Both the position numbers and the translations under genes were made by a program. Under the pieces are notes generated by a model that was not told the DNA's origin, ran no database searches, and saw nothing but the letters and a program-made list of their open reading frames with translations. A stretch of 64,000 bases of DNA from the IMG/VR virus record IMGVR_UViG_3300043411_000921, positions 62,001-126,000 of that record; one strand, written 5' to 3'. Positions 9,056 to 25,440 of the stretch are shown here, in pieces; the first letter of the stretch is position 1; every line of letters starts with the position of its first letter.

Positions 9056-9078
9056 TGTTGGTGTATGGTGCTCTTAGC

Positions 9079-10059: not shown

Positions 10060-10076
10060 AAGAAAAAACACAAGAC

Positions 10077-10841
10077 ATGGAAACAGAATTTCTTGACGAA
10101 TTGATCCCACTTCTTCCAGAAGAACCTATCATCATTTATCAGTCACCTCTTGGTCACAGAGAGAAGAGAGATTATTCAGGAAGCAAAAAGGAGCTTGTGA
10201 TTCTCCTATCGGATGAATCACATCAGCCTGTTGATTTCAAAAACTGTTTGGTGTTTAGGAATTACATTCCCTCAAAACCAGCAGCCAACGAAAGACCAAT
10301 TCCTCTTCCATTTGCCTCTGGATTCAAGAGTGATTTAACGGAGCACTTGTCATTCAATGACAGGAAATACATGATGGCCTTTGCTGGTTTTGTGGGCGAT
10401 ATGCGGAGGCAACAAGCTGTCAATGCCATGTCCACCATTGGGAAGCAATTAAATCGTGTCTATATTCGTCCTAGTGAGGGTTTCTCAAAAGGATTGACGC
10501 GACAGGAATATAGTGAAGTGATGTGCAATACCATGTTGGCAATCTGTCCACCTGGAGGAAGTCACGAATCATTCAGGATGACAGAGGCTTTGAAAGCTGG
10601 ATGTATTCCTGTGTTGTTGAACAAAAAAGATCGTCAGTGGTATGACCCGGACTTCAAGACAGCTTTTTGGTTGCAATCGTGGGATGAACTTCCAGGGCTT
10701 GCTTCCTGGGTCATTAATACCGATCCAATGATTTTGAAGGAACGCTCCAAGGCTTGTAGAGAATTTTACAAGACTCATCTTTCACCAGAAGCAGTCGCAG
10801 GATATATCACAAGAGAATGGTACAAGGATCAAACCAAATGA
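10077..10841 (+). CDS. Exostosin-like (GT47) glycosyltransferase
   Basis: YSEVMCNTMLAICPPGGSHESFRMTEALKAGCIPVLL. Confidence 0.7.
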   Translation: METEFLDELIPLLPEEPIIIYQSPLGHREKRDYSGSKKELVILLSDESHQPVDFKNCLVFRNYIPSKPAANERPIPLPFASGFKSDLTEHLSFNDRKYMMAFAGFVGDMRRQQAVNAMSTIGKQLNRVYIRPSEGFSKGLTRQEYSEVMCNTMLAICPPGGSHESFRMTEALKAGCIPVLLNKKDRQWYDPDFKTAFWLQSWDELPGLASWVINTDPMILKERSKACREFYKTHLSPEAVAGYITREWYKDQTK

Positions 10842-11800
10842 AAAAAAACAGAGCGGCGATTGTCACAGGTGGAGCAGGCTTCATTGGAAGCAATCTCGTC
10901 GATACCCTCATTGCCAAAGACTTTCAAGTTATCTGCATCGACAATGAATCAGCAGAAAGCAATTCACAGTTTTACTGGAATCCAGCAGCACACAACATCA
11001 AAGGAAATGTCTGTCACCAAGACAGCATTCTTTCAGATGTTCGTTGGATTGCCAATGAACACAACTTGAATATTGAGACGGTTTATCACCTTGCAGCAGA
11101 AGCAAGGATCCAGCCTTCCTTCAAGAAAAAGGATCTGGTGTTCAGAACCAATGTGATGGGAACGGTTTCGATGTTGGAAGTGGCAAGGGAGTTGAAGGCA
11201 AGCAGGTTTGTTTATTCTTCCACTTCTTCGGCATACGGGAACGCTTCTATTCCTTTCGATCAATACACTCCAACGAAGTGTTCCACGCCTTATGCGGCTG
11301 GGAAGGTGGGTGGTGAGCTTGCTTGCTTTGCTTATGATACAACAGGTGCAGAAGATGAACTCCAAACGACTGTGTTGAGGTACTTCAACGTTTATGGACC
11401 AAGACAGCCAATCAAAGGGCAATATGCCCCAGTGGTTGGGTTGTTCTTGCGCCAAAAAGCAGAAGGAAAACCTCTGACGGTTGTTGGTGATGGAAAGCAA
11501 ACCAGGGATTTTACCCACGTCGATGACATTGTTGCTGGAACAATTGCCGCTGGTGATGTTTCCAACTTTATTCCAGAGAGCATTAGGAAGAATCCAATCA
11601 ACCTTGGGACAATGGAGAGATATAGCATCCTCTATCTGGCAGAAATGATCGGTGGAGAAATCGTTCATGTGCCCGAGAGAAGGAATGAAGCTCGGCATAC
11701 CCAAGCTGACATTTCTGTCGCCCATGTTTGGTTGAACTATCAACCAACTGTTAAACTAACCGATTGGATCAAAGAGGAATTGAAGAAGGTGAAGAAATGA
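10838..11800 (+). CDS. NAD-dependent nucleotide-sugar epimerase/dehydratase (extended SDR)
   Basis: VTGGAGFIGS, HLAA, YSSTSSAYG, YAAGK, LRYFNVYGP, RDFTHVDD. Confidence 0.9.
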   Translation: MKKNRAAIVTGGAGFIGSNLVDTLIAKDFQVICIDNESAESNSQFYWNPAAHNIKGNVCHQDSILSDVRWIANEHNLNIETVYHLAAEARIQPSFKKKDLVFRTNVMGTVSMLEVARELKASRFVYSSTSSAYGNASIPFDQYTPTKCSTPYAAGKVGGELACFAYDTTGAEDELQTTVLRYFNVYGPRQPIKGQYAPVVGLFLRQKAEGKPLTVVGDGKQTRDFTHVDDIVAGTIAAGDVSNFIPESIRKNPINLGTMERYSILYLAEMIGGEIVHVPERRNEARHTQADISVAHVWLNYQPTVKLTDWIKEELKKVKK

Positions 11801-12519
11801 CAATGACTGTTTTGGTAAAGTTTCCGACAAGAGGAAGGCCGGACAGGTTTTTCCCTGTGTTGGACAGGTATTACTACGGATCCAAGAAAAAGAATGCAAC
11901 CAAGTTTCTTGTGTCGTGTGACCTGGATGATCCCAGCATGAACAATGATACTGTAAGACAGAAGTTCTCTCAGTATCAGAATCTTGAAGTGTGCTATGGT
12001 AACTCCAAAACCAAAATTGAAGCTGTGAATGCTGACATGGATAAAGCTGGGGAATACGATATTCTCCTGCTCGCCTCAGATGACATGATCCCAGAGGAAA
12101 GAGGATACGATGAGATCATCAGAGGAAAGATGGAGGAGTTGTATCCAGACACCGATGGTGTTCTTTGGTTTTTTGATGGGTACCGAAAAGACTTCAACAC
12201 TCTCTGTATTCTCGGAAGGAAATATTACGAGCGGTTTGGGTACATCTATCATCCAGATTACAAGTCCTTCTGGTCTGACAACGAGTTTACCGAGGTTGCG
12301 AACTCTCTTGGCAAGCAGACTTTCATTGACAAGGTAATCATTAGACACGTTCACCCCGACTGGATTCAAAGAGATCCAGCAACGAAAACGCTGTTCCAAC
12401 AGATTCATCCAACCACAACGAATATCGGGCTTGATGAAACCTTCATGAAGAATCTGCCCTACGAAAGACAGGATGCTGCTGTGTATCTCCAGAGAAAGGC
12501 AGCAGGGTTTCCTAGATGA
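11797..12519 (+). CDS. GT-A (GT2-like) glycosyltransferase
   Basis: VKFPTRGRP, ASDD, YHPDYKSFWSDNEFT, IRHVH. Confidence 0.75.
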   Translation: MTMTVLVKFPTRGRPDRFFPVLDRYYYGSKKKNATKFLVSCDLDDPSMNNDTVRQKFSQYQNLEVCYGNSKTKIEAVNADMDKAGEYDILLLASDDMIPEERGYDEIIRGKMEELYPDTDGVLWFFDGYRKDFNTLCILGRKYYERFGYIYHPDYKSFWSDNEFTEVANSLGKQTFIDKVIIRHVHPDWIQRDPATKTLFQQIHPTTTNIGLDETFMKNLPYERQDAAVYLQRKAAGFPR

Positions 12520-13169
12520 AAAAGATCATCTCGTTCTGTCTCTGGGGAAATGATCCAAAGTACACGATTGGAGCTTTGAGAAACGCAGAGCTTGCCAAGA
12601 CAGTTTATCCTGGGTGGACTCCAAGGTTTTACGTTGGTTCTTCCACTTCCCCAGCCGTAACAAAACAACTTCTTCGTGCAGGCGCAGAGGTTGTCAACAT
12701 GACCGAACCTGGAGATTGGAGAGGAATGTTCTGGAGGTTTTATCCTGCTGGGGAGCCTGATGTCGAAGTAATGTTGTCCAGAGACACAGACTCAAGACTT
12801 TCCATGAGAGAAAGGGCTGCCGTTGATGAATGGCTCTCAGACCCAGAGAAAGTGTTCCATATCATGAGAGATCATCCAGCACACAAAACAGAAATTCTTG
12901 GTGGGATGTGGGGTGCAAGAGGAGGATTCCTTTCAGAGATGAAACAGTTGATCGACGAATATCCAGCAGGAGACTTCTGGCAGGTTGATCAAAACTTCCT
13001 CAGAGAGAAGATTTATCCACTCGTCAAACATCGTGCAAAAGTTCATGATCCCTTCTTTGAGAACAAACCTTTCCCAACACCAAGAATTGGAACAGAGTTT
13101 GTTGGTGACGTGTTTGATTCGACCGATGTAAGACACCCAGAATATTGGAAAGCAATTCCCCAACAATGA
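12516..13169 (+). CDS. Putative GT-A glycosyltransferase-like protein
   Basis: IISFCLWG, MFWRF, SRDTDSR (DxD), MRDHPAH, ILGGMWG; sits inside the glycan cluster. Confidence 0.6.
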   Translation: MKKIISFCLWGNDPKYTIGALRNAELAKTVYPGWTPRFYVGSSTSPAVTKQLLRAGAEVVNMTEPGDWRGMFWRFYPAGEPDVEVMLSRDTDSRLSMRERAAVDEWLSDPEKVFHIMRDHPAHKTEILGGMWGARGGFLSEMKQLIDEYPAGDFWQVDQNFLREKIYPLVKHRAKVHDPFFENKPFPTPRIGTEFVGDVFDSTDVRHPEYWKAIPQQ

Positions 13170-14044
13170 AAATCCTCATGATTCAAGAGCGTGGCAGGCA
13201 CGAAGCAAACAGAGAGTTTCGTGAAAGTGAAAACTTCCGACGTTCCTTCGAGCGAATTGGTGTTGAGTCTGAGGTCTGGGGAATCAACCAACCAACCTTT
13301 TCAATCCCATTCCATGAAATGATCAAGGACTATGATGTGATCTTTGCGATGGAGAACTACGACGAATCTGGTTGGCTCCCAGACCTTTCTCAAATCACAA
13401 ACAAATTCAAGGTGTTCTGGAGTATTGACTCTCACCTCGCTTTGGGTCAGCACGTTTTCTTTTCCAAGCGAGCCAAGTTTGACTTGCATCTCAACAGCAC
13501 GGAAGGATACCTCAAACACTTCCTCCGTCATTCTCCGACTTGTCTCTGGTTTCCCAATGCTTATCCCGATGATCTGATTGATCATATTCCACATGCCTCT
13601 AAATCGCACGACGTTGGCTTTTGCGGGTCACTGATTGGTGGAAGGGGTCAGTGGTTGGAAAATATTTCCTCTGCCTCTAATAAGGCGATTAGACGGGATG
13701 CTGGGGTTCTGGGAAGAGGGATGGTGGAAGCCATCAACTCCTACAAGGTTGCCTTGAACCAAAGTCTTCTGGATGACATCAACTACCGAGTGTTTGAAAC
13801 TCTTGGAGCAAAAACATGTTTGCTCACCAACACCGTTCCTGGGTTGGATAAGCTTTTCATCCCAGGCAAACACTTGATGACTTACAGTAATCAGCAAGAG
13901 CTTGTTGAAAAACTGCATTATCTTCTGGGGAAGCCAGAAGTTGTTGAAGAAGTTGCTGCTGCTGGGTATGATCACGTTAGAGCAAATCACACTTATGATG
14001 TGAGAGCCAAACAACTGATGGAGATTTTGAAGGAGAAGGTATGA
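13166..14044 (+). CDS. GT-B glycosyltransferase, CgeB/Glyco_trans_1_2-like
   Basis: YKVALN...NYRVFETLG...ELVEKLHYLL...GYDHVRANHTYDVRA. Confidence 0.8.
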   Translation: MKILMIQERGRHEANREFRESENFRRSFERIGVESEVWGINQPTFSIPFHEMIKDYDVIFAMENYDESGWLPDLSQITNKFKVFWSIDSHLALGQHVFFSKRAKFDLHLNSTEGYLKHFLRHSPTCLWFPNAYPDDLIDHIPHASKSHDVGFCGSLIGGRGQWLENISSASNKAIRRDAGVLGRGMVEAINSYKVALNQSLLDDINYRVFETLGAKTCLLTNTVPGLDKLFIPGKHLMTYSNQQELVEKLHYLLGKPEVVEEVAAAGYDHVRANHTYDVRAKQLMEILKEKV

Positions 14045-14862
14045 AGATTTTGAAACCAGTGGTAGGTGGACACGATGGAAGTTCTTTCAGAGAACTTCTT
14101 GATATTTGGGAAGAAATGGGGCTGTGTGAGGTTGTTCCAGGACCAACGCCAACACAAACATATCCAGGGTTGGATCATATTTCACAATATCCAGAGTCAA
14201 GACCTTGGGTTGATCGGGTTGGAGGAATCCTTCTCTATGACAACCCAATCCTCGACAAACTATCTCAGCACTTGACTTGGGAAATGGCTTTGTGGGCCAA
14301 TCAAGTTCACAAGGGAGAAAATTGTTTTCCTTGGACCTTCTGGGCAAAGCATCCAAAGGTCATGGAAAAGATCAGGAAAGAAGGTATCCCGGATTATTCC
14401 GGTCGTGCCTTTGAAAGCATTTTCATTGGAACATTCACAACAGGACTTCGTGGCGGACATGATTGGTCAAAAGCCATTCAGAAATACTGGATGGGGCAGC
14501 ATAGCCAACGAATTGTATCCAATGACCAGTATCTCAATTTGTTGAAAAACAGCAAGTTTGGCTTGTGTCTCCCTGGTGTTGGACCAAAGTGTTTGAGAGA
14601 TATTGAGTTGATTGGAATGGGAACAGTTCCAGTGTTTACCCCTGGAGTTTCTACTGATTACTACAACCCTCCACAAAAGAACGTTCACTACCTCTACGCC
14701 GAATCCCCTGAAGAAGTGCGAGAAGTTATTTCCAAATGTTCTCCTGCTCAATGGACAGAGATGAGTGAAGCTTGTCTGGAATGGTATGAAGCTAACTGCT
14801 CTCCTCAAGGTTCCTTCAACCTCACCCAAAAAATCATTGAAGACAACAGGAGGAAGAAGTGA
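14041..14862 (+). CDS. Putative GT-B glycosyltransferase (GT47/CgeB-like C-terminus)
   Basis: YLNLLKNSKFGLCLPGVGPKCLRDIELIGMGTVPV. Confidence 0.6.
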   Translation: MKILKPVVGGHDGSSFRELLDIWEEMGLCEVVPGPTPTQTYPGLDHISQYPESRPWVDRVGGILLYDNPILDKLSQHLTWEMALWANQVHKGENCFPWTFWAKHPKVMEKIRKEGIPDYSGRAFESIFIGTFTTGLRGGHDWSKAIQKYWMGQHSQRIVSNDQYLNLLKNSKFGLCLPGVGPKCLRDIELIGMGTVPVFTPGVSTDYYNPPQKNVHYLYAESPEEVREVISKCSPAQWTEMSEACLEWYEANCSPQGSFNLTQKIIEDNRRKK

Positions 14863-15644
14863 GCAAGAGCGACAACCTTGTTTTTATTCCTCACATGGGG
14901 CTTGGTGACGTTATTCTGGTAAATGGTTTGCTGCGTTATCTTGCCAAATCTTACAAAACCGTAGTGATGCCATGCAAGGAGAACAACCTTCTCACCGTAA
15001 GACGAATGTTTGAGGATATGGAGAATCTGTTCCTCCTTCCAGTTGTTGGTGGTTTGAAATACACTTCTGCACAAGAAGATGTCAAGCAAGCTCAAATGCT
15101 GGGGAAGACCTACAAACTCTATGGATATGATCACATCGGGCTTGGTTTTTTTGGAAATAGGTTCCGTGAGTTCGAACAAACCATTCACAACAAAACAATG
15201 ACTTATGAGGAATTCTTCTATCTGGAGGCTGGGGTTCCTTTTGAAGAGAAGTGGAATTCATTCAAACTAAACAGGAACCCGTGGAGGGAATTAGATTTGT
15301 TTGATAGGTTTGGCGTGTCTCCTGGGGAATATGTTTTTTTGCATGATGACCCGGATAGAGGAAGAGTTATTGACAGAAGCATTTTTCCTCCTGGGTTGCC
15401 TGTGATCACTCCGAAGGAGATGTTCTATCGTGGAGACATTCTGGATTACGGGTATGTCATGGAGAACGCCAAAGAACTTCACATGACAAACAGCTCATTT
15501 GCTGACTTGGCTGATTTCTTCAACCTCCCAGCAGACCAGAAGAAGTGCATTCACCTCTACGCTTTGACAGAAGGACACTTTCATTGTCCTGTAAAATACA
15601 AGCATAACTTCCAGACGATTTACAACTCTCCGTCCAATCCTTAG
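14859..15644 (+). CDS. Putative glycosyltransferase (GT9-like N-terminal motif)
   Basis: HMGLGDVILVNGLLRYL and AKELHMTNSSF; cluster context. Confidence 0.5.
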   Translation: MSKSDNLVFIPHMGLGDVILVNGLLRYLAKSYKTVVMPCKENNLLTVRRMFEDMENLFLLPVVGGLKYTSAQEDVKQAQMLGKTYKLYGYDHIGLGFFGNRFREFEQTIHNKTMTYEEFFYLEAGVPFEEKWNSFKLNRNPWRELDLFDRFGVSPGEYVFLHDDPDRGRVIDRSIFPPGLPVITPKEMFYRGDILDYGYVMENAKELHMTNSSFADLADFFNLPADQKKCIHLYALTEGHFHCPVKYKHNFQTIYNSPSNP

Positions 15645-15667
15645 ACGCGCTCGCAACATTATCGGGC

Positions 15668-16069
15668 ATGACTGAAATTCTCATTCCCGTCTCCGCTGGT
15701 GAGCTTTTTGACAAAATCACCATCCTCAAAATCAAACTCCAAAAGATTCAAGACCAAGCCAAACTCAGGAATGTTCATTCGGAACTCTTGAAGCTGGAGA
15801 AGGTTGTTTCGGATAATGGACTTTCCATCCCAACAGAGCTTTTTGATAGGCTAATGGGAGTCAACAACCGTCTGTGGGAAACCGAAGACCTTATTCGTGA
15901 AAAAGAGTCCAAAGGTCTTTATGATGATGACTTCATCAGGTTTGCTCTGCTTGATGCACAACTCAACGATTTGAGATTTGTTGTCAAGCGAGAGATCAAC
16001 AACCTGTTTGATTCTTCTGTAAAGGAAGAGAAGTCATACAGTGAAGAAGTTCTCAACAGAAAGAAGTGA
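15668..16069 (+). CDS. DUF6165-like protein
   Basis: IPVSAGELFDKITILKIK...VNNRLWETED...NDLRFVVKREIN. Confidence 0.7.
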   Translation: MTEILIPVSAGELFDKITILKIKLQKIQDQAKLRNVHSELLKLEKVVSDNGLSIPTELFDRLMGVNNRLWETEDLIREKESKGLYDDDFIRFALLDAQLNDLRFVVKREINNLFDSSVKEEKSYSEEVLNRKK

Positions 16070-17204: not shown

Positions 17205-18355
17205 TCGAGCTTGTGAAAGATACCATCGACAAGAAAGACATCAACCAACTCATCAAGTGGTTGAAAACATATCCAAGACTCACCAAGGGTGAATTGACAA
17301 CCAAATTTGAGGAGAAGTGGTCGAAAATGCTGGGAGTTGAACACAGTGTTTTTGTGAACTCTGGTTCGTCTGCAATTCTCATGATGCTCCAAGCTCTTTT
17401 GGAATCTGGAAGAGTTCAACGAGGAAGTAAGGTCGTTGTCCCAGCTTTATCCTGGGCAACTGACTTTTCTTCTCCTGTTCAACTTGGCTTTGAACCAATT
17501 GTTTGTGATTGCAACCTGGAGGATCTCTCTGTTGACTTGAATCAGTTGAAAGAAATCTTTGAAGTTGAAAAGCCCGCAGCCTTGATTCTTGTTTCTGTTC
17601 TGGGATTGGTTCCAGACATGGACGCTGTTGTCCAACTCTGTCAAGAACACAATGTTATTCTGCTGGAAGATGTGTGTGAGTCTTTGGGCTCAACCTACAA
17701 AGGCAGGCAACTCGGAACCTTCGGTGCCATGAGCATCTTTTCCACTTACTTCGGTCATCACATCAGCACGATTGAAGGCGGAATGGTTTGCACCAATGAC
17801 CCAGAACTTAACATGGTTTTGAAAGCAATCAGAAACCACGGGTGGGATAGAGACCTCACAACAGAACAAAAAACAGAACTCAGGACCGCGTTCGGCGTTG
17901 ATGACTTCAGTGCTCTCTACACGTTTTACTTCCTTGGGTTCAACTTCCGTTCAACCGATCTCCAGGCGTTCCTTGGAATGGGACAACTAGACAAGCTTCC
18001 TTCGATTGTAAAGAAGCGCAACAAAAACTTCTTGCAGTATAAGAAGGAGATTTACAATCTCTGGTCTCCGCAAAGCTCTGAGGGTGGGTTTGTTTCCAAC
18101 TTTGCCTATCCAGTGCTTCTCCAGAACAAGGAAGAGGCATTGGTGAGATTAAACGCTGCTGGGGTTCAAGTGCGTCCTTTGATTTGTGGGAGTATGACTT
18201 CCCAGCCGTTCTACACGAAGAACTTTCCAACACCAAAATATGACACGCCAAATGCAAGGCTTGTTGACAAGCACGGCTTCTACCTTCCAAATCATCCAAA
18301 GCTGACACGAAAAGAAATTTCTGTTGTGTGTGCAGCTATCAAAGACCTCTGGTAA
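17201..18355 (+). CDS. ColD/E1-like PLP-dependent 3-dehydratase
   Basis: VNSGSSA, LEDVCESLG, STYFGHHISTIEGG (His in place of Lys), RNHGWDR, GFNFRSTDLQA. Confidence 0.8.
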   Translation: MIELVKDTIDKKDINQLIKWLKTYPRLTKGELTTKFEEKWSKMLGVEHSVFVNSGSSAILMMLQALLESGRVQRGSKVVVPALSWATDFSSPVQLGFEPIVCDCNLEDLSVDLNQLKEIFEVEKPAALILVSVLGLVPDMDAVVQLCQEHNVILLEDVCESLGSTYKGRQLGTFGAMSIFSTYFGHHISTIEGGMVCTNDPELNMVLKAIRNHGWDRDLTTEQKTELRTAFGVDDFSALYTFYFLGFNFRSTDLQAFLGMGQLDKLPSIVKKRNKNFLQYKKEIYNLWSPQSSEGGFVSNFAYPVLLQNKEEALVRLNAAGVQVRPLICGSMTSQPFYTKNFPTPKYDTPNARLVDKHGFYLPNHPKLTRKEISVVCAAIKDLW

Positions 18356-18360
18356 ACCAA

Positions 18361-19269
18361 ATGGCAATCAACATTTCACTGGAAACTCATAGACCTCTCT
18401 ATGAGGACTTCTACGCTTGCCTTGATTTTCTTCATGGTGTGAAAGACGAGGATTACTCCTACCCAGACAGGATTGTCCCTTTTCACATTTACTCTGAGTT
18501 TAAGACCGACAAAGAGATCGTCAGCTTGATGTCTTACTTCGCCACACAAAACCTTGAGAAAACCAAGGTGATTGTTTGGTCTGACTATGACATCACCAAC
18601 GAACCAAGAGTTCAGAGGTTCAAACACTTGGTTGATTTCAGAGTTTGGAATGCTGAGAAGGAAGCGGTTGGAAGTCCGATTGAAGGAGACACGAGAATGT
18701 TTCGGGCTGCTGATCAGAAACATTATCTCCAGAGTGATCTTTTGAGACTGCTTGCTTTGTGGAAGTACGGAGGCGTCTGGATCGACATGGATATTATCCT
18801 CCTCAGAGATTTCAAACCTCTTTTGGATCAAGAATGGATGTATATGTGGGGAAGTGAAACAGACTTCAAAGCCCAAGGAGCCTGTGCCTCTGTTCTCAGT
18901 CTCCAGCCAAAGTCGTACCTTGCAACAGAGCTTCTTGTTGAAGCACAGAAGATGCCAATTGTTCCCAACTCTACATGCTGGGGCAAGGATATGTTTGCTC
19001 AACTTTACCGCAGATTACCTTTCCAGGTGATGCCAGCAACGTTTTTCAACATTGAATGGTGTATGAACAAGCGTATTCCCGGAGCTGGCGACGCTGCTGA
19101 GTCCGGTTGGTTCAAGAGCCTTCCCAGCAACCACAAACACTTGTTCCCAGAAACGTTTGCTTGGCATTGGCATAACAGCAGCAAGAAGGATTTGATTGTT
19201 GAGCCAGGATCCAAGTTTGATCTTTTGACCAAGTTGACAGAACAGAAACTGGTTGATCGAGGTCTTTGA
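18361..19269 (+). CDS. GT32-like glycosyltransferase (DXD sugar-binding)
   Basis: SDLLRLLALWKYGGVWIDMDIILL, FAWHWHN. Confidence 0.8.
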   Translation: MAINISLETHRPLYEDFYACLDFLHGVKDEDYSYPDRIVPFHIYSEFKTDKEIVSLMSYFATQNLEKTKVIVWSDYDITNEPRVQRFKHLVDFRVWNAEKEAVGSPIEGDTRMFRAADQKHYLQSDLLRLLALWKYGGVWIDMDIILLRDFKPLLDQEWMYMWGSETDFKAQGACASVLSLQPKSYLATELLVEAQKMPIVPNSTCWGKDMFAQLYRRLPFQVMPATFFNIEWCMNKRIPGAGDAAESGWFKSLPSNHKHLFPETFAWHWHNSSKKDLIVEPGSKFDLLTKLTEQKLVDRGL

Positions 19270-19313
19270 GAGTCAATACATAAACAACCCACAGAATCAA
19301 TCCTTGTGGGTAA

Positions 19314-19958
19314 ATGCCAGAAAACAAACAATGGGCAACAAAAGAGGTAGCAGTTCAACACGGTTATCTCTCCCCACCTTCCCAACCCCTTCCCAGCCAT
19401 CTAGCAGCAATCCAAGCAATCAAACCATTCCTTCTTCAACTTCGCAAGTCTGATAAAGATAAACTCTACGTCAGTGACTTGGGCTGTGGAAATGGAAGAA
19501 TGATCCTTGCTCTCGAACAAGTGCTTGGTCCTTCTGTTCCATTTGGTTATGTCGGATACGATTTCAACGAATCTTGCTTGGAGGAAGCGAGAAGGAATTT
19601 CCCAGATCGCTTTTTCATGACAATGGATTTGGATGCTTATGATGGTATGGCCCCAACCCATTCAGATTTGGTTATCCTTGACAGCACCTTGTCGATGGTA
19701 GAAAGACCCAAAGAACTCCTCCTCGGGCTTCTAAAAGCCAACAGAGCGGTTCTGGTGGAGCGTATCAGAACCGGAGAAAAAACAGTCAGAGAAGAATATG
19801 TTTGGGGAGGAATGACTCAGCCATCAGTCAACTGGGCATTCCACCCTTCCTTCTTCTTTGAAGTTGCCAATGAATCAGGTTGCATGATCGCTCACAGAAG
19901 CGACACACGAATCCTTTTTGTGAAAGATGAAGACGAAGAAAACAGCAATGATGAATAA
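19314..19958 (+). CDS. Class I SAM-dependent methyltransferase
   Basis: VSDLGCGNGRM, YVGYDFN. Confidence 0.8.
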   Translation: MPENKQWATKEVAVQHGYLSPPSQPLPSHLAAIQAIKPFLLQLRKSDKDKLYVSDLGCGNGRMILALEQVLGPSVPFGYVGYDFNESCLEEARRNFPDRFFMTMDLDAYDGMAPTHSDLVILDSTLSMVERPKELLLGLLKANRAVLVERIRTGEKTVREEYVWGGMTQPSVNWAFHPSFFFEVANESGCMIAHRSDTRILFVKDEDEENSNDE

Positions 19959-20871
19959 CAATCAGACAACAACAATCAGTGTGATCGGGAATGGATTTGT
20001 GGGTGGCGCAGTTGCCAATGGCTTCTCAAGGCTCAATCCAAAGGTTTACGACATTGATCCGAAAAGATCAACGTGCTCCCTAACAGAAGCTCTTGAATCA
20101 AAATTCATCTTTGTCTGTCTTCCAACCCCAATGGTAAGTGCAGAAGGTGGAGAAGCAAATCTCTCCATCATCGAATCCTTCTTTCAACAAGCATTCCAAC
20201 ATTCCATCAATCCCTCTTCTGTCTTTGTCATCAAATCAACAGTTCCAGTAGGAACAACCAAAAGACTTCAGAAACAATTCCCTGGTTTGAGGTTGGTTCA
20301 CAATCCAGAGTTCCTGACAGCAGCAAGGGCCAACCTGGATTTCATCAATGCAGACAGAACTGTTTTGGGTGGTGATGACCAGGATGCCCTTCAATCGCTC
20401 CAGGAGCTTTATGCGGGCGAGTTCCCTCATGTTCCTACCCTTACCATGTCCAGCACCGACAGCGAGCTTGTAAAATACTCTGCGAACTGTTTCCTGGCAA
20501 CCAAGACCATGTTCTTCAACGAGATCAAATTCCTCGCTGAGAAAATGGGTGCAACCTATGAGAACGTTGTCGCGGGAGTTGTCTCCGACAAAAGAATTGG
20601 TCCGAGTCACACAAAAGTTCCCGGACCTGATGGAGACTACGGGTTTGGTGGTACCTGTTTCCCCAAAGACATCAATGCCCTTGTTTCAACGATTGAAAGT
20701 TGTCAAGAAGATTGCTTAGTGGAAGATAACCAGAAGAGGGATCCAAAAGGGACTCATATAGTTCCTTCACCTTCGTCTAAGATTTTCAAAGCTGTCTGGG
20801 AGAGGAACAAGGAAGTTAGGAAGAACTGGGATTGGGCATCCAGTCCATCTGCCGTGAAAGGTCTGTCGTGA
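19948..20871 (+). CDS. ugd: UDP-glucose/GDP-mannose 6-dehydrogenase, short form lacking the C-terminal domain
   Basis: VIGNGFVG, VCLPTP, IKSTV, NPEFL, ELVKYSANCFLA, GFGGTCFPKD; carries repeat copy 2 near the C-terminus. Confidence 0.85.
   Translation: MMNNNQTTTISVIGNGFVGGAVANGFSRLNPKVYDIDPKRSTCSLTEALESKFIFVCLPTPMVSAEGGEANLSIIESFFQQAFQHSINPSSVFVIKSTVPVGTTKRLQKQFPGLRLVHNPEFLTAARANLDFINADRTVLGGDDQDALQSLQELYAGEFPHVPTLTMSSTDSELVKYSANCFLATKTMFFNEIKFLAEKMGATYENVVAGVVSDKRIGPSHTKVPGPDGDYGFGGTCFPKDINALVSTIESCQEDCLVEDNQKRDPKGTHIVPSPSSKIFKAVWERNKEVRKNWDWASSPSAVKGLS
20716..20746 (+). repeat. Dispersed repeat, copy 2 (in frame in the dehydrogenase)
   Basis: TTAGTGGAAGATAACCAGAAGAGGGATCCAA, encoding LVEDNQKRDP. 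Confidence 0.9.
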
Positions 20872-21117
20872 AAGTCAAGACGGCACTGCAATCCAAAACC
20901 GTACTCGAAAGACTACTATCATAAAGTCAAAGGCATTCCCGCCAAAGAAGTCTGGAAAAGGGACAAACAAAGAGTCAAAGCCTTGAAAGCTCTTGGTTAT
21001 TCAGTCTTCGTTGTTTGGGAAAATGATTTCAAAGATGAGCGAACTAAGACACTGGAAGGTGTCAAAGAATTTCTAGGGAAAGAGAATGAATCAACAACAA
21101 CTTCAACAGCCTGTTAG
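20872..21117 (+). pseudogene. 5'-truncated Vsr/EDxHD-like endonuclease remnant
   Basis: HCNPKPYSKDYYHKVKGIPAKEVWKRDKQRVKALKALGYSVFVVWENDFK; no in-frame start before the motif; the frame is closed upstream by the ugd TGA. Confidence 0.7.
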
Positions 21118-22649
21118 GAAAAACAAGATCCTGGTATTGAGCGACCATCCATTAAACTGACTTGTGACAGTGGATGTAAAATTGGGTGAATTGCTGGAAA
21201 CTCCTGAGAGCAGCACACGCAACAGCAAAACTGGAAACGGTATGTGCGATTGCAAAAAAGATGTGTTGATTGGACAATCAGCAGCCAAGCTCCTGTCTGG
21301 AAACAGTGGAGAAGGTTCAACGACTACGGTTAGCCTAAAAGCTCTTGCTCATGGCGATGATCCGACAGCGCCCAGCAATTCGACAATCGAATTGATGATA
21401 TAGTCTGTTCGTTGGTGAAAATCAGCGAGTAAACGTGTGTACTTCGGGTGTTGGTACCCAAAGCCGCTTTCTTATTCATGGTCTTGTAGCAACGGGAAGA
21501 TATTCGTTCCGTTGTCTTGGAGGAGCGATCAAACACCCGAACTATGATCCAATCGTAGTAAACCCAGATTTCATCATCAAACCTGTTGATGGCTTCGGAG
21601 ACAGGAATATGATCAGGAACCTCCTGATCAATGAAAGACCAGACGCGGTTCTACTGTTCACAGATCCAAGACAGTTTATGTGGCTTTGGGAAATGGAAGA
21701 TGAGATTCATCAGGTTTGCCCTATCGCTTATTGGCACGTCTGGGACAATGATCCATACCCTGCATTCAACGATGTTTGGTATCACTCAACAGACCTGATC
21801 AACTGTCTTTCTCACAAAACCTACGAGCTTGTCAAACCTCATTTTCCAGAGAGAACAAACTACATTCCTCACGCCTTTCCGAAAGAGGTTTATCATCCTC
21901 TTCCAGCAGAGACAGTAAAACAACTGAGGAGTGTGAATTACAAGGAGCGTGCTGACTGGTTCATTGGAGCTTGGATCAACAGGAATGCAACCAGGAAGAT
22001 GCCAAACGATGTCTTGATGTCTTGGAAGATGTTTTTGGATGATCTGGAGAAGAAGGAAGGTCACAGGAAGGCAATGCTCGTGATGCACACTGACCCACAA
22101 GACACAGAAGGACCAAACCTTTTTGCAACCGTCGAGAACCTTGGATTGACCAGTAATGTTGTGTTCTCAACTCAAAAGGTTGATTTCAACGACATGAATG
22201 CGCTTTACAACTCAGTTGATTTTATTGTGAACGTGTCGAAGGCAGAAGGGTTTGGATTGGCAACCTTGTCTGGTTTGATGGTTGGGAAACCGATCATTGC
22301 ACTGAAGACTGGGGGAATGACACGTCAGGTTGTGGATTATCGAGATGGAACAGAGCATGGGGTTGCCATTGATCCAGCTTGCAGAGTTCTTGTTGGCTCT
22401 CAGATGGTTCCTTACATCTTCGACGATCACTTCAAACATGAAGATTTGTCAGCAGCCTTTCTAAAGGTTTATTCCATGTCTCCAGAAGAGAAAGAAGTGC
22501 TTACCAAAAAGAACATTGCTTATGCTGAACACGAGTTCGGTTATGAGAAGATGATCTCTGAGTGGGATAGGACTCTGGATAAAGTGATCAGAGATTTCAA
22601 GAGCAACCCACCAAAACGCTGGACATGCTCCAAACTCAACAACAAGTGA
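21086..22649 (+). CDS. GT4 glycosyltransferase, spliced: join(21086..21152,21436..22649), 426 aa
   Basis: Exon 1 gives MNQQQLQQPVRKNKILVLSDHP; splicing restores SDHPLCTSGVGTQ; later EGFGL, GKPII motifs. Confidence 0.85.
21153..21435 (+). ncRNA. Group I self-splicing intron, no internal ORF (283 nt)
   Basis: P AATTGCTGGAAA 21189, Q AATCAGCAG 21276, R GTTCAACGACTA 21315, S ATGATATAGTCT 21395; P1 CATCCAT/GTGGATG with U-G at the splice site; P9 hairpin 21409-21428; terminal G 21435; frame restored. Confidence 0.92.
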
Positions 22650-22660
22650 ATAACAACACA

Positions 22661-23878
22661 ATGAACACTTCATCCACAAAGAAAACTGTTCTGCTTAGGG
22701 GTCCATTGTTGGTACATGCCGGTTACGGCGTGCATACCCGTCAAATTGCTCGTTGGCTGTTTCGTGTTGCATCCGAACAACACGATCTTGACATTACAAC
22801 CGAACCACTTCCTTGGGGAGACACACACCTTCTCGTAGACCCAGAAGCAGAAGATGGACTCATTGGACAAATCCTTCAAGCTTCGGGAAACAAGAAGTCC
22901 TTCTACGATGTAACAATCCAAGTCCAGCTTCCAAACGAATGGAATCCTTTCTTGGGAAATTTTAACGTTGGTGTGACTGCTGGAGTTGAGACAGATAAGT
23001 GCAATCCAGCTTGGATTGATTGCATCAACAGGATGGACATGGTTGTTGTTCCCAGCACCTTCACCAAAGAAACCTTCATGGCAACAGGTGAAATCAAAGT
23101 TCCTGTTGCTGTGATCCCAGAAGCGTTTCCAGACGCAATGCAAGACCAGAACCAACTTATTCCAGAGGATCCAGACTTGGATTTGGGGTTGACAACAAAG
23201 TTCAATTTGTTGGTTGTTGGTCAGTTGACAGGAACTAATCCTGAGAATGACAGGAAGAACCTTCCTTACACTCTCAAGTGGATTGCTGAAACTTTTGCAG
23301 GCAACAAAGATATTGGTGTGATTGTCAAGACGAATGCTGGAGCACAGACACAACTTGACAAGAAGAACGTTGAAGGAATTTTCAAGAAGCTTGTTACCGA
23401 GATTCAGCCTGCTGGTGTTCCTGGTCCAACCTTTTATCTTCTTCATGGTCACATGACTGATGAAGAGATGAACAGGCTGTATCGGCACAAGGAAATTGCA
23501 GCCCTGATTTCTTTGACACACGGCGAAGGTTATGGACTTCCCATTCTTGAAGCTGCTGCTTGCGGTCTTCCAGTGATTGCAACAAACTGGAGTGGGCATC
23601 TTGAATTCCTGAAGCATGGAAAGTTTATTCCGGTTGACAGGATGTTGGGAGAGGTTCCAGCTTCCAGGGTCGATGGTCAAATCTTCCTTGCTGGAATGAA
23701 GTGGGCCAACCCAGTTGAGATTGACGTGAAGAGAAGGTTGAGGAAGTTTTACGAGTCTTCTTCTATGCCAAAGCAATGGGCGAGGGAATTGGCTCGTGTG
23801 ATTCAGAAGGAATACTCGTTCGACGCGGTATCCAGTATTTACTCAAAAGCCCTTGGTGGCGTTTTGGGGAGTTCCTGA
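22661..23878 (+). CDS. GT4 glycosyltransferase
   Basis: GYGVHTR, GVTAGVETD, VVVPSTFTK, RKNL, THGEGYGLPILEAAACGLPVIATNWSGHLEFL. Confidence 0.85.
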   Translation: MNTSSTKKTVLLRGPLLVHAGYGVHTRQIARWLFRVASEQHDLDITTEPLPWGDTHLLVDPEAEDGLIGQILQASGNKKSFYDVTIQVQLPNEWNPFLGNFNVGVTAGVETDKCNPAWIDCINRMDMVVVPSTFTKETFMATGEIKVPVAVIPEAFPDAMQDQNQLIPEDPDLDLGLTTKFNLLVVGQLTGTNPENDRKNLPYTLKWIAETFAGNKDIGVIVKTNAGAQTQLDKKNVEGIFKKLVTEIQPAGVPGPTFYLLHGHMTDEEMNRLYRHKEIAALISLTHGEGYGLPILEAAACGLPVIATNWSGHLEFLKHGKFIPVDRMLGEVPASRVDGQIFLAGMKWANPVEIDVKRRLRKFYESSSMPKQWARELARVIQKEYSFDAVSSIYSKALGGVLGSS

Positions 23879-24201
23879 TGTTCCTGTATGTTTTTCTTCT
23901 GGCTCTTGTTGTCGCAACGGGGTTTGCGGCCTTCTTTGCTATTCGCTGGGCGAAGATTATCTTTCTTCTTGAGGATGATTTGTCGGAGGCGATTGAGATT
24001 CATGAGAGGACCGCAGCGACGCTAGAAGGCATTTTGAAGACGCCAATGTTCTTCGACTCACCAGAGATCAAGCGAGCTGCAACGGAGGCTCTGGATAATG
24101 TCAAGGTGTGTCAGACAGCCACCCAGAAATTGGTTTACAACTTCACACAACGCAGCAAGCAGCGATATGTCAGGATTGAAGAAAGCGTAGAATCAGAATA
24201 A
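23878..24201 (+). CDS. Small membrane-anchored hypothetical protein
   Basis: ATG overlaps the upstream TGA; N-terminal hydrophobic helix MFLYVFLLALVVATGFAAFFAI. Confidence 0.6.
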   Translation: MFLYVFLLALVVATGFAAFFAIRWAKIIFLLEDDLSEAIEIHERTAATLEGILKTPMFFDSPEIKRAATEALDNVKVCQTATQKLVYNFTQRSKQRYVRIEESVESE

Positions 24202-24202
24202 C

Positions 24203-25431: not shown

Positions 25432-25440
25432 CGTTTTGGC

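What the first reader, a model, noticed from the sequence alone, without database searches (positions are those of the whole stretch)
10077..23878. 14-kb phage glycan-building locus abutting the baseplate module
About nine glycosyltransferase-like genes of different folds (GT47-, GT2-, CgeB-, GT9-, GT32-, GT4-like) cluster with an epimerase, two PLP sugar enzymes, UGDH, a methyltransferase and DUF6165. No flippase, polymerase or export gene is visible. That, and the position beside the late sigma and tail genes, favours a complex cytoplasmic glycan added to virion proteins over host LPS conversion or simple DNA glucosylation (inference).
Basis: partly seen in the sequence, partly recalled or inferred. 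Interest (0 to 1): 0.65.

Follow-up and report, generated by a model that had tools for sequence, protein, structure and literature searches.

The report
Swappable sugar-gene island in jumbo phage
A large freshwater and wastewater phage carries a real 14-kb block of sugar-building genes: two conserved glycosyltransferases next to a cassette that differs between close relatives, which most likely puts a strain-specific glycan on a phage-made target such as the virion, though the target is unproven.

Summary
From 10077 to 23878, 16 of 17 consecutive + strand genes are sugar-related. Nine are glycosyltransferase-like: seven by HMM and two by predicted fold.

Four corrections:
- One "PLP enzyme" is a ColD-type 3-dehydratase.
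- The UGDH lacks its C-terminal domain but is under purifying selection.
- The first GT4 gene is split by a 283-nt group I intron, with an endonuclease remnant beside it.
- The "late sigma" call rests on a sub-threshold hit.

Comparative data change the picture. The two GT4 genes are a core pair of an abundant jumbo-phage lineage, with homologues in Flavobacterium phage immuto, Microcystis phage Mel-JY01 and Rhodothermus phage RM378. The genes between a conserved PD-(D/E)XK nuclease and this pair are swapped wholesale, even between relatives with 93-100% identical flanks.

Adjacency to the baseplate holds only within this lineage. In the isolated relatives the pair sits among DNA and nucleotide genes.

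The 241 kb held contain no lipid-carrier initiating transferase, flippase or polymerase. They also contain no DNA hydroxymethylase, only a canonical ThyA. Published LC-MS of immuto DNA shows no glycosylated base.

Virion or other phage-protein glycosylation is the best reading (about 0.4). Remodelling of host envelope glycans is not excluded. This is a new member of a known but unexplained kind, the phage "LPS" clusters.

The parts
9055..10059 (+). PD-(D/E)XK nuclease. Conserved upstream flank of the island.
   Evidence: Pfam PDDEXK_1, 70 bits. Homologues flank the island or the GT4 pair in L002, L003, L006, L007, L010, immuto and Mel-JY01.
10077..10841 (+). GT47/Exostosin-like glycosyltransferase
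   Evidence: Pfam PF03016, 50 bits against a cut-off of 33. dN/dS 0.08 against L003.
10817..11800 (+). SDR nucleotide-sugar 4-epimerase-type enzyme. It has the STSSxYG motif, not the Asp-Glu pair of 4,6-dehydratases.
   Evidence: Pfam Epimerase, 171 bits. Best PDB match is Bacillus cereus UDP-GlcA 4-epimerase 6zl6, followed by GalE and UXS. No NCBIfam equivalog reaches its cut-off.
11764..12519 (+). GT-A type glycosyltransferase. Probable start near 11797.
   Evidence: phrog_14945 glycosyltransferase, E 5.7e-16. No Pfam hit. Conserved in L002, L003, L007 and L010.
12516..13169 (+). 217-aa GT-A fold glycosyltransferase of a very large, mostly viral family
   Evidence: More than 4000 clusters at 58-98% identity among those listed, with no Pfam domain. 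AF2 pLDDT 93.8. Best PDB fold match is the PBCV-1 A64R capsid-glycosylating GT 2p6w (E 1.6e-7, TM 0.55-0.58), then glycogenin. A homologue lies inside the GT/GMD cluster of cyanophage S-SRM01.
13145..14044 (+). CgeB-type (Glyco_trans_1_2) glycosyltransferase
   Evidence: Pfam PF13524, 97 bits.
14041..14862 (+). Probable GT-B glycosyltransferase (weak). First gene of the cassette that is missing from the closest relatives.
   Evidence: Sub-threshold hits to GT47, Glyco_trans_1_2 and RXYLT1_C. Present in L004, absent from L002 and L003.
14859..15644 (+). GT9-like (heptosyltransferase-fold) GT-B protein
   Evidence: No HMM hit. AF2 pLDDT 86.8. Foldseek best matches are GT9 3tov (E 7.8e-7), WaaF, WaaC and TibC. 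The Atlas neighbours are viral 'GT9' clusters, one of which carries DUF6165.
15668..16069 (+). DUF6165 protein of unknown role. It travels with the GT9-like gene and the two DegT-family genes.
   Evidence: Pfam PF19662, 35.6 bits. The same block is kept in L004.
16041..17204 (+). PLP sugar 4-aminotransferase, perosamine-synthase-like, with the catalytic Lys present
   Evidence: DegT, 368 bits. Best PDB match is GDP-perosamine synthase 3dr7/3bn1 at 235 bits, with Lys aligned to the PLP lysine. LegC and PseC models score below their cut-offs.
17201..18355 (+). ColD-type PMP-dependent nucleotide-sugar 3-dehydratase. His replaces the Schiff-base Lys.
   Evidence: Best PDB match is ColD/WbdK 2gms at 200 bits, ahead of E1 3bcx at 146 bits. 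The His-His aligns with ColD His188, the site changed in mutant entry 3b8x.
18328..19269 (+). GT32-type (DXD) glycosyltransferase. Last gene of the cassette missing from L002 and L003.
   Evidence: Pfam Gly_transf_sug, 43 bits, and Caps_synth. No homologue in any related locus.
19314..19958 (+). SAM-dependent methyltransferase
   Evidence: Pfam Methyltransf_31, _25, _12 and _11.
19927..20871 (+). Short UGDH-like dehydrogenase. It has the N-terminal and central domains and the catalytic Cys motif, but no C-terminal UDP-binding domain.
   Evidence: Pfam UDPG_MGDP_dh_N and UDPG_MGDP_dh only. TIGR03026 positions 69-279 of 413 are matched. No C-terminal domain in any frame downstream. dN/dS 0.088 against L003, so it is not a decaying pseudogene.
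20719..20753 (+). Copy of a dispersed ~32-nt repeat, lying close to the point where UGDH homology ends
   Evidence: Ten copies in the 241-kb genome. A tighter 20-nt core gives 9 copies against 0 in each of 5 shuffles. Metagenome contigs break here.
20875..21117 (+). C-terminal remnant of a free-standing restriction-endonuclease-fold homing endonuclease gene
   Evidence: Sub-threshold hits to REase_MTES_1575 (23.6 bits) and DUF559. L002 has about 650 bp more here, including a Cys-rich 231-aa ORF.
21086..21152 (+). Exon 1 of core glycosyltransferase GT4-1 (22 codons plus 1 base)
   Evidence: tblastn with the N-terminus of the intron-less orthologue in L003. Read from the sequence.
21153..21435 (+). 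Group I intron, 283 nt, with no ORF
   Evidence: Rfam RF00028, 84 bits against a gathering score of 50, at 21123-21427. The 5' exon ends in U21152, which pairs with G21170 in a 7-bp P1. The last intron base is G21435. The intron is absent from L003 and all more distant orthologues, whose reading frames run straight through the site.
21436..22649 (+). Exon 2 of GT4-1, the first gene of the conserved core pair
   Evidence: Pfam Glyco_trans_1_4 and Glycos_transf_1. 59-99% identity in L002-L011, 61-64% in L103-L105, 31% in immuto and Mel-JY01, 23.5% in RM378.
22625..23878 (+). GT4-2, the second core glycosyltransferase, with an intact E-x7-E motif. Probable start near residue 23.
   Evidence: Pfam Glycos_transf_1, 46 bits. 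More than 3300 related clusters on contigs up to 364 kb. Homologues in immuto gp90 and the Mel-JY01 'hypothetical' protein. Motif alignment.
24203..24997 (+). Conserved 264-aa protein, possibly a gp55-like sigma factor (weak)
   Evidence: Sigma70_r2, 15.7 bits against a cut-off of 24. Conserved in all relatives and in immuto, upstream of its baseplate genes.
28500..30359 (+). Baseplate wedge (gp6/Baseplate_J-like) protein, the anchor of the downstream structural block
   Evidence: 31% identity over 98% of its length to the immuto 'baseplate wedge protein'. Weak Baseplate_J hit. Conserved in all relatives.

Best explanation
The locus is a two-layer glycan-building system of a jumbo myovirus.

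**Core layer.** Two soluble GT4 glycosyltransferases (21086-22649, interrupted by a group I intron, and 22625-23878) are inherited vertically across a deep phage lineage. I infer that they attach the first sugars to an acceptor the phage itself supplies, most likely one or more virion proteins.

**Variable layer.** A swappable cassette sits between a conserved nuclease and the pair. In this phage it holds seven more GT-like genes, a 4-epimerase-type SDR with a UGDH-like dehydrogenase (a uronic-acid branch), a perosamine-synthase-like aminotransferase with a ColD-like 3-dehydratase (a branch for 4-amino and/or 3,6-dideoxy sugars, probably from host GDP-4-keto-6-deoxymannose), a methyltransferase and DUF6165. 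I infer that this layer builds a strain-specific outer glycan from host nucleotide sugars in the cytoplasm.

**Shown:** gene identities, catalytic residues, the core/variable architecture, purifying selection, and the absence of lipid-carrier, export and DNA-hydroxymethylation genes in the DNA held.

**Inferred:** the acceptor, the division of labour between core and cassette, and the sugar products.
For: (1) All nine GT-like proteins are soluble, with pI 5.3-7.1. No ORF in the 241 kb is polytopic; the maximum is 4 hydrophobic segments, in a 1667-aa protein.

(2) Bac_transf, Glycos_transf_4 (WecA type), NTP_transferase and GT2 are absent from the whole record. The controls for these searches were positive.

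(3) The GT4 pair is conserved from 99% down to about 30% identity. It occurs in phages of Flavobacterium, Microcystis and (for GT4-1) Rhodothermus, which are hosts of three phyla. This fits an acceptor that travels with the phage.

(4) The island content is replaced wholesale:
- L002 and L003 have 93-100% identical flanks but lack 14041-19269.
- Other relatives carry GMD, RmlD-like enzymes, UDP-GlcNAc 2-epimerase, WbqC, FkbM, a sulfotransferase, GT2, PfkB, an aldolase, a transaldolase and a cytidylyltransferase.
- Genes that are kept are under strong purifying selection, dN/dS 0.01-0.09.
This is the pattern of exposed, diversifying glycans.

(5) DNA as acceptor is disfavoured. The genome has a canonical ThyA only (396 bits to PDB ThyA). 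Immuto virion DNA has normal dA, dC and dT plus fdPreQ1.

(6) Weak fold hints toward protein acceptors. The best PDB match of the 217-aa GT-A is the PBCV-1 capsid-glycosylating A64R, followed by glycogenin. TibC appears among the GT9-like matches. A CgeB-type domain is present.

(7) Within this lineage the pair is fixed directly upstream of the baseplate and fibre block.
Against: - There is no direct evidence for any acceptor.
- Fold matches to GT-A and GT-B enzymes do not predict acceptors, and the margins over other hits are small.
- The deepest conserved neighbours of the GT4 pair are a nuclease and nucleotide or replication genes, not structural genes.
- The gp23-like major capsid protein has no Ser/Thr-rich C-terminal extension of the mycobacteriophage type. 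It has only an internal S/G/T-rich insertion.
- Soluble GTs can decorate host undecaprenyl-linked intermediates and rely on host flippases.
- The record is only about 66% complete, so absences are provisional.
- Virion glycosylation by phage enzymes is so far documented only for mycobacteriophages (cited in PMC12619734).
Confidence: 0.4

Rival explanations
1. Host envelope remodelling. The phage GTs act in the cytoplasm on host lipid-linked intermediates (O-antigen, capsule or general O-glycosylation precursors), and host flippases and ligases export the altered glycan. This would change the infected cell surface, for example to block superinfection or stop progeny sticking to debris. It is the usual reading of cyanophage 'LPS' clusters.
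For: - The enzyme repertoire (perosamine-synthase-like, ColD-like, UGDH, epimerase, GT4, GT9-like, GT32) is that of O-antigen and capsule loci.
- Similar multi-GT clusters occur in P-SSM2, S-SSM7, S-SRM01 and S-SCSM2R and are annotated as cell-wall or LPS genes.
- Lipid-linked primers such as Und-PP-sugars are shared across Gram-negative phyla, so a conserved GT4 pair does not strictly require a phage acceptor.
Against: - The 241 kb contain no initiating transferase, flippase, polymerase or ligase.
- The function of the cyanophage clusters has never been shown: 'not known whether these LPS genes are functional'.
- A core pair kept across hosts of three phyla, together with strain-level cassette swapping between 93-100% identical phages, is harder to tie to one host pathway.
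Confidence: 0.27
2. DNA hypermodification. The GTs glycosylate a hydroxylated base in phage DNA to evade restriction, as in T4, RB69 and the MT/5mYOX-GT clusters.
For: - GT-B/GT4-like enzymes do build mono- to tri-saccharides on DNA.
- The GT4 pair's deepest conserved neighbours are a nuclease and nucleotide or replication genes.
- Both GT4s give weak hits to GT4-conflict PF20706.
Against: - The only TS-family gene is a canonical ThyA, 89 kb away.
- No Tet_JBP was found, though that control was silent.
- In immuto, which has the homologous pair and a sugar island, LC-UV-MS found canonical dA, dC and dT plus fdPreQ1.
- Nine GTs plus amino- and dideoxy-sugar enzymes exceed any known DNA glycan.
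- The GTs are neutral to acidic.
Confidence: 0.07
3. Another product. The system makes a soluble or lipid-bound glycoconjugate, or glycosylates non-virion proteins (host or phage) in the infected cell.
For: - GT4 enzymes include sucrose-phosphate, MshA/BshA and glycolipid synthases.
- RM378 keeps GT4-1, with an uncertain second GT, and no other sugar genes, inside a nucleotide-metabolism block.
Against: Extensive cassette diversification with O-antigen-like rare sugars is not expected for a housekeeping metabolite. There is no supporting precedent in phages.
Confidence: 0.15

Closest known systems
'LPS' or cell-wall glycan gene clusters of large aquatic myoviruses (P-SSM2, S-SSM7, S-SM2, S-SRM01, S-SCSM2R; the sugar island of Flavobacterium phage immuto)
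   Same: Many GTs of mixed families together with nucleotide-sugar enzymes (GMD, epimerases, aminotransferases, methyltransferases). No export genes. Variable between related phages. Function unknown. The 217-aa GT-A has a 42% homologue inside the S-SRM01 cluster.
   Different: Here the cassette occupies a fixed slot next to a vertically inherited GT4 pair, and in this lineage next to the baseplate block. The cyanophage clusters sit among photosynthesis AMGs and tRNAs. The gene sets are otherwise unrelated.
Mycobacteriophage virion glycosylation (Freeman et al. 2023, as cited in PMC12619734)
   Same: Phage-encoded cytoplasmic GTs acting on phage structural proteins. This is the proposed mode of action here.
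   Different: Those phages have only a few GTs and no sugar-nucleotide pathways, and they infect actinobacteria. Their acceptors are C-terminal extensions of the capsid and tail-tube proteins, which the gp23-like capsid protein here lacks. No homology was tested.
Giant-virus glycosylation machinery (PBCV-1 A64R and others; Mimivirus fibril clusters; review PMC9614988)
   Same: Virus-encoded GTs plus pathways for rare bacterial-type amino and deoxy sugars, working in the cytoplasm without export machinery (recalled from the literature; the review PMC9614988 appeared in the search but was not read). The best PDB fold match of 12516-13169 is A64R. Atlas neighbours of two island proteins include Nucleocytoviricota clusters.
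   Different: Eukaryotic hosts. Only 17-19% identity. Fold similarity is shared with many GT-A enzymes.
Phage DNA sugar hypermodification clusters (T4, RB69/DLP3 arabinosyl-5hoC, MT/5mYOX-GT clusters)
   Same: GT-B/GT4-like enzymes, sometimes with sugar-activation genes, and variable between phages.
   Different: Those clusters sit beside a TS-homologue hydroxylase or hydroxymethylase, or a 5mYOX, with dCTPase and kinase genes. Here only a canonical ThyA exists, far away. Immuto DNA is not glycosylated.
Bacterial O-antigen loci with colitose or perosamine (ColD, Per) and uronic acids (Ugd, UGA epimerase)
   Same: The same enzyme families and catalytic residues. A tandem ColD-like plus Per-like pair also occurs in a few cellular genomes: L028, L093, and more weakly L029 and L030.
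   Different: No WbaP/WecA, Wzx, Wzy/Wzm-Wzt or WaaL. No GMD in this phage; L004 has one.
ORF-less group I intron with an adjacent free-standing homing endonuclease ('collaborative homing', cyanophage psbA with F-CphI; from my own knowledge)
   Same: A 283-nt intron without an ORF, in a highly conserved site of a core gene. An endonuclease-like gene lies immediately upstream. Presence and absence vary between near-identical phages.
   Different: The host gene is a glycosyltransferase. The endonuclease here is only a remnant. Neither cleavage nor splicing has been shown.

Membership tests
Wzy- or ABC-dependent surface polysaccharide (O-antigen/capsule) locus | Polyprenyl-phosphate initiating transferase (WbaP/PglC or WecA type) | tested here: not met
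   PF02397 and PF00953 are absent from all 241 kb, with positive controls. The record is about 66% complete.
Wzy- or ABC-dependent surface polysaccharide (O-antigen/capsule) locus | Flippase, polymerase, ligase or ABC exporter (polytopic membrane proteins) | tested here: not met
   A hydropathy scan of 319 ORFs found none with more than 4 hydrophobic segments, and none in the locus.
Wzy- or ABC-dependent surface polysaccharide (O-antigen/capsule) locus | Nucleotide-sugar modifying enzymes plus several GTs | tested here: met
Phage DNA sugar-hypermodification cluster | TS-homologue hydroxymethylase or hydroxylase, or MT plus 5mYOX, supplying a hydroxylated base | tested here: not met
   There is a single TS-family gene, at 398 bits to Pfam and 396 bits to solved ThyA, so it is canonical. 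It lies 89 kb from the locus. The Tet_JBP search was empty, but its control was silent.
Phage DNA sugar-hypermodification cluster | Sugar-bearing nucleosides in virion DNA | not testable with these tools
   For the relative immuto_2-6A, published LC-UV-MS shows dA, dC, dT and fdPreQ1 only.
Phage virion glycosylation (mycobacteriophage type) | Phage-encoded soluble glycosyltransferases | tested here: met
Phage virion glycosylation (mycobacteriophage type) | Glycans on capsid or tail proteins | not testable with these tools
   Needs virion glycoproteomics.
Phage virion glycosylation (mycobacteriophage type) | Ser/Thr-rich C-terminal acceptor extension on the capsid protein | tested here: not met
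   The gp23-like protein (G000:205138-207105, 655 aa) ends like gp23. It has only an internal S/G/T-rich insertion. The tail tube was not identified.
Group I intron (RF00028) | Covariance-model score above the gathering score | tested here: met
   84 bits against 50, with the full model matched.
Group I intron (RF00028) | 5' exon ends in U paired with G in P1; intron ends in G; exons restore the reading frame of intron-less orthologues | tested here: met
   U21152 pairs with G21170 in a 7-bp P1, and G21435 is the last intron base. Exons 21086-21152 and 21436-22649 correspond to the continuous frame in L003 and seven other loci.
Group I intron (RF00028) | Splicing observed in RNA | tested here: inconclusive
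   No 21152>21436 joint appeared in four runs. All were contigs, and the RNA labels are doubtful.
ColD-type PMP-dependent 3-dehydratase | His in place of the PLP-binding Lys; closer to ColD than to aminotransferases | tested here: met
   The His-His aligns with ColD His188. 200 bits to 2gms, against 125 bits to perosamine synthase.
DegT-family sugar aminotransferase (perosamine-synthase-like) | Conserved PLP-binding Lys | tested here: met
   Lys aligns with the PLP lysine of 3dr7. No NCBIfam equivalog cut-off was reached, so the substrate is inferred.
UDP-glucose 6-dehydrogenase | NAD-binding domain and central domain with the catalytic Cys | tested here: met
   The Cys motif is visible in the translation.
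UDP-glucose 6-dehydrogenase | C-terminal UDP-sugar binding domain | tested here: not met
   The profile is matched only to position 279 of 413. No C-terminal domain lies downstream in any frame. I therefore do not file it as a canonical UGDH.
T4 gp55-like late sigma factor (24203-24997) | Sigma-70 region 2 similarity | tested here: inconclusive
   Sigma70_r2, 15.7 bits against a cut-off of 24. No PHROG hit.

The most novel reading that the evidence does not exclude
An abundant lineage of freshwater and wastewater jumbo phages coats its virions with strain-specific glycans. A vertically inherited GT4 pair would prime phage structural proteins, and horizontally swapped sugar cassettes would write a variable outer glycan. 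This would amount to a phage 'serotype' system, the first outside actinobacteriophages, and an explanation for the long-unexplained 'LPS' clusters of large aquatic phages.
Probability: 0.33. Interest if true: 0.8.

Novelty: new member of a known kind. Interest (0 to 1): 0.58.

Why it matters
Large aquatic phages often carry big sugar-gene clusters. Since 2010 these have been labelled "LPS genes" or even "stuffer DNA", and nobody has shown what they do.

This locus adds three things:
- **A clear architecture.** A conserved GT4 pair sits next to a cassette that is exchanged between near-identical phages and kept under purifying selection. That pattern argues for a functional, diversifying glycan.
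- **A link to cultivable relatives.** Immuto and Mel-JY01 carry the same core pair. For immuto, DNA glycosylation is already made unlikely by published mass spectrometry.
- **A direct test.** Whether the glycan goes on the virion or on the host surface can now be settled with ordinary virion glycoproteomics.

If virions are glycosylated, this bears on phage-host recognition, on grazing and particle stickiness in water, and on how phage particles evade recognition. The group I intron inside a glycosyltransferase gene is a small new example of intron homing into a core phage gene.

Tried and rejected
- **Near-identical phage records:** none.
- **PHROGs on ten structural-region proteins and on the small conserved ORFs:** no hits. 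The structural block is therefore defined only by homology to immuto and by synteny.
- **Promoter and terminator consensus scan of 8500-28400:** no more sites than in shuffles. The T4 late-promoter octamer is absent. There is no timing information.
- **7-deazaguanine route, as in immuto:** no TGT/DpdA, and only a sub-threshold QueC hit.
- **GtfA/GtfB-like idea (one catalytic and one inactive GT4):** rejected. The second Glu of E-x7-E is missing from GT4-1 only in this sub-lineage and is present in immuto, Mel-JY01, RM378 and L012. GT4-2 is intact.
- **Host clue from the aminotransferase:** the nearest cellular homologues (51-57%) are scattered across Acidobacteriota, cyanobacteria, DPANN and CPR. 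DUF6165 and the GT9-like gene are not found beside them.
- **Splicing evidence from public runs:** all four runs were contigs. No exon-exon joint was seen. One RNA-labelled contig covers the unspliced 5' junction. This is inconclusive.
- **UGDH as a decaying pseudogene:** rejected, dN/dS 0.088.
- **Is the phage a 'moraphage' (PMC12619734)?** I could not tell from the paper's text.
- **Complex prediction:** not used. No specific pair was likely enough to justify a job.
- **Spliced GT4-1 model:** it was never joined. Only exon 2 (by reference, as 21435-22649) and exon 1 (located by tblastn) were used.

Full report
**Where the window lies.** The window is bases 62001-126000 of a 241,399-bp linear IMG/VR virus record that CheckV estimates at 66% complete. 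It has no close match among 50,697 deposited phages.
- Its baseplate wedge protein (28500-30359) is 31% identical to that of Flavobacterium phage immuto and 28% identical to that of Microcystis phage Mel-JY01.
- The same or closely related DNA occurs in freshwater and wastewater metagenomes of 11 studies.
- The host is unknown.

**The observation.** From 7303 to 35418 the + strand is one tight array of overlapping or abutting genes. Within 10077-23878, family scans give:
- a GT47/Exostosin-like GT;
- an SDR epimerase;
- a CgeB-type GT;
- a weak GT47/GT1_2-like protein;
- DUF6165;
- two DegT-family enzymes;
- a GT32-type GT;
- a SAM methyltransferase;
- a UGDH-like protein;
- two GT4 proteins;
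- a PHROG glycosyltransferase at 11764-12519.

Two genes had no family. I collected homologues, modelled both and searched the PDB.
- 12516-13169 (pLDDT 93.8) is a GT-A fold. Its best match is the PBCV-1 capsid-glycosylating enzyme A64R, followed by glycogenin and GpgS.
- 14859-15644 (pLDDT 86.8) is a GT9-like GT-B. It matches 3tov, WaaF, WaaC and TibC.

**Enzyme details.**
- 16041-17204 resembles GDP-perosamine synthase (235 bits) and keeps the PLP lysine.
- 17201-18355 is closest to ColD (200 bits). It has His where aminotransferases have Lys, at the position altered in the ColD H188 mutant structure. It is therefore a PMP-dependent 3-dehydratase.
- Both model enzymes use GDP-4-keto-6-deoxymannose. 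The relative L004 carries the same block (DUF6165, aminotransferase, dehydratase, methyltransferases) plus a bona fide GMD at 434 bits. This phage has no GMD anywhere in the DNA held, so the substrate would come from the host. That step is inference.
- The SDR at 10817-11800 is closest to UDP-GlcA 4-epimerase, GalE and UXS. It has the Ser-rich epimerase motif, not the dehydratase Asp-Glu pair. This fits a uronic-acid branch with the UGDH-like gene.
- The UGDH-like protein keeps the catalytic Cys motif but stops where the C-terminal UDP-binding domain should begin. No such domain lies downstream. Even so, its dN/dS against L003 is 0.088, so it is maintained by selection.
- No nucleotidyltransferase is encoded. 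The pathways start from host nucleotide sugars.

**A revised gene model.** The 564-bp gap before the first GT4 gene holds three features.
- A group I intron: Rfam RF00028, 84 bits against a gathering score of 50, at 21123-21427.
- The intron-less orthologues (L003 at 93% identity, and seven others) read straight through a conserved N-terminal segment. In the window that segment is split.
- Exon 1 is 21086-21152, the intron is 21153-21435, and exon 2 is 21436-22649.
- The 5' exon ends in U21152, which pairs with G21170 at the end of a 7-bp P1. The intron ends in G21435.
- The intron is present in the window and L002 only.
- Just upstream, 20875-21117 is the C-terminal remnant of a restriction-endonuclease-fold gene, with sub-threshold REase_MTES_1575 and DUF559 hits. 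L002 has about 650 bp more there.
- The layout recalls ORF-less introns that home with a neighbouring free-standing endonuclease (my own knowledge).
- Public runs gave no exon-exon joint, but all were contigs.

**Comparative genomics.** Twelve IMG/VR loci were found with GT4-2, and three more distant contigs by exact look-up. All three distant contigs and ten of the twelve loci share the following block at 31-100% identity: GT4-1, GT4-2, a ~110-140-aa protein, a ~250-aa protein, a ~145-aa protein, a ~560-590-aa protein, a gp25-sized protein, the baseplate wedge, a ~510-530-aa protein, and a ~1140-aa protein with a Laminin_G_3 domain. The other two loci, L012 and L013, share only the GT4 pair, at 30-32% identity.

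Upstream, a PD-(D/E)XK nuclease is conserved in five of the IMG/VR loci. Between the nuclease and the pair, the content changes completely.
- L002 and L003 (flanks 93-100% identical) lack 14041-19269 and carry two other genes there.
- Other relatives carry GMD, RmlD-like enzymes, UDP-GlcNAc 2-epimerase, WbqC, FkbM and other methyltransferases, a sulfotransferase and GT2s.
- Others carry SDRs, a PfkB kinase, an aldolase, a transaldolase and a cytidylyltransferase, or GT2, radical SAM and a full-length UGDH with a GIY-YIG endonuclease beside it.
- All retained genes show dN/dS of 0.01-0.09.

The locus is therefore a fixed slot holding exchangeable, functional sugar cassettes next to a core GT4 pair. 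The GT4-2 family alone has more than 3300 related clusters, on contigs up to 364 kb.

**Deeper relatives.**
- Immuto has the order nuclease, GT, GT, then about eleven sugar genes downstream. Its baseplate is 30 kb away.
- Mel-JY01 has replication genes, nuclease, GMP reductase, GT (split), GT, then more GTs and a methyltransferase.
- RM378 has GT4-1 between a 'polymerase I-like' gene and ribonucleotide reductase, with no other sugar genes.
The older association is with a nuclease and nucleotide metabolism.

**What is the acceptor?**

Against DNA:
- The only TS-family gene is a canonical ThyA, 89 kb away.
- No Tet_JBP was found, though the control was silent.
- LC-UV-MS of immuto_2-6A virion DNA found canonical dA, dC and dT, with fdPreQ1 replacing dG (PMC10516641).

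Against a self-contained surface-polysaccharide pathway:
- There is no polytopic membrane protein, no Bac_transf and no WecA-type enzyme in 241 kb.

For a phage-borne acceptor:
- The core pair persists in phages of three host phyla.
- The cassettes diversify like exposed glycans.
- The fold hints (A64R, glycogenin, TibC, CgeB-type domain) lean towards protein acceptors, but they are weak.

Against over-reading:
- The gp23-like capsid protein has no C-terminal acceptor tail, only an S/G/T-rich insertion.
- Soluble GTs could decorate host lipid-linked intermediates.

I put virion or phage-protein glycosylation at about 0.4, host envelope remodelling at about 0.27, another product at about 0.15 and DNA at about 0.07.

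**Comparison with what is known.** Multi-GT clusters are well known in large aquatic myoviruses.
- P-SSM2, S-SSM7 and S-SM2 carry 'LPS' clusters of unknown function.
- S-SCSM2R has 13 GTs.
- S-SRM01 has a 13-kb cluster that contains a homologue of the 217-aa GT-A.
- 'Moraphages' have four core GT orthogroups.

This is therefore a new member of a known, unexplained kind. What is new:
- the core-pair-plus-cassette architecture;
- the tie to cultivable relatives, one of which has DNA already shown not to be glycosylated;
- the ColD-like plus perosamine-synthase-like pair;
- the short but selected UGDH-like gene;
- the intron in a GT gene.

**Verdict.** Novelty: new member of a known kind. Interest 0.58, mainly because the question of what phage sugar clusters do becomes directly testable.

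Noticed in passing
window 21153-21435 (exons 21086-21152 and 21436-22649): A group I intron (RF00028, 84 bits) splits the conserved GT4-1 glycosyltransferase gene at a highly conserved N-terminal motif. It is present in the window and L002. It is absent from L003 (93% identical protein) and from all other relatives.
   Followed up: yes
window 20875-21117; L002:7538-8493: A remnant of a restriction-endonuclease-fold (MTES_1575/DUF559-like) homing endonuclease gene lies directly upstream of the intron-bearing gene. L002 keeps about 650 bp more, including a Cys-rich zinc-ribbon ORF. In L105, a GIY-YIG/NUMOD3 endonuclease sits in the equivalent region, just upstream of the UGDH gene.
   Followed up: partly
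window 5285, 20722, 27854 (+) and 58301 (-); six further copies elsewhere in G000: A dispersed ~32-nt repeat (core GATAACCAGAAGAGGGATCC) occurs in ten copies in 241 kb. The 20-nt core gives 9 copies against none in shuffles. Each copy is oriented with the local direction of transcription. The repeat occurs at the two orthologous sites in L002 and L003 only. One copy lies close to the point where UGDH homology ends, and metagenome contigs break at it. It may be a promoter, a recombination site or a homing site; this is unresolved.
   Followed up: partly
window 19927-20871: The UGDH-like protein lacks the whole C-terminal UDP-binding domain yet is under strong purifying selection (dN/dS 0.088). 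It may be a novel short dehydrogenase form, or it may work with a partner.
   Followed up: partly
window 12516-13169: This 217-aa GT-A belongs to a very large family (more than 4000 clusters; those listed are 58-98% identical). The family is highly conserved, almost entirely viral and has no Pfam model. It also occurs in cyanophage S-SRM01, in 735-kb huge phages and in an Acinetobacter phage.
   Followed up: partly
window 14859-16069: The GT9-like gene and DUF6165 are adjacent here and in L004. An ESM Atlas cluster of giant-virus proteins (~290 aa) near the GT9-like protein carries DUF6165 in a quarter of its members. This hints at a functional pair or a fusion.
   Followed up: no
window 5459-10059: Upstream lie an RNA ligase (with a PHA02142 OB domain), a GMP reductase/IMPDH-family gene and a PD-(D/E)XK nuclease. 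The nuclease and GMP reductase accompany the GT4 pair in Mel-JY01, and the nuclease accompanies it in immuto too.
   Followed up: partly
window 27251-28012: This acidic, Ala/Pro/Gly/Ser-rich 253-aa protein has a hydrophobic core segment. It diverges much faster than its neighbours in the conserved structural block (47-66% over partial lengths, against 55-75% for its neighbours). It also carries one copy of the dispersed repeat.
   Followed up: no
G000:205138-207105 (-), outside the window: The gp23-like major capsid protein is 655 aa. It has an insertion of roughly 180-250 residues, rich in Ser, Gly and Thr, relative to the Pfam Gp23 profile. It may be a surface domain.
   Followed up: partly
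window 31990-35418: Orthologues of this 1142-aa protein downstream of the baseplate wedge carry a Laminin_G_3 (concanavalin-like) domain in L103-L105. It is likely a fibre or receptor-binding protein.
   Followed up: no
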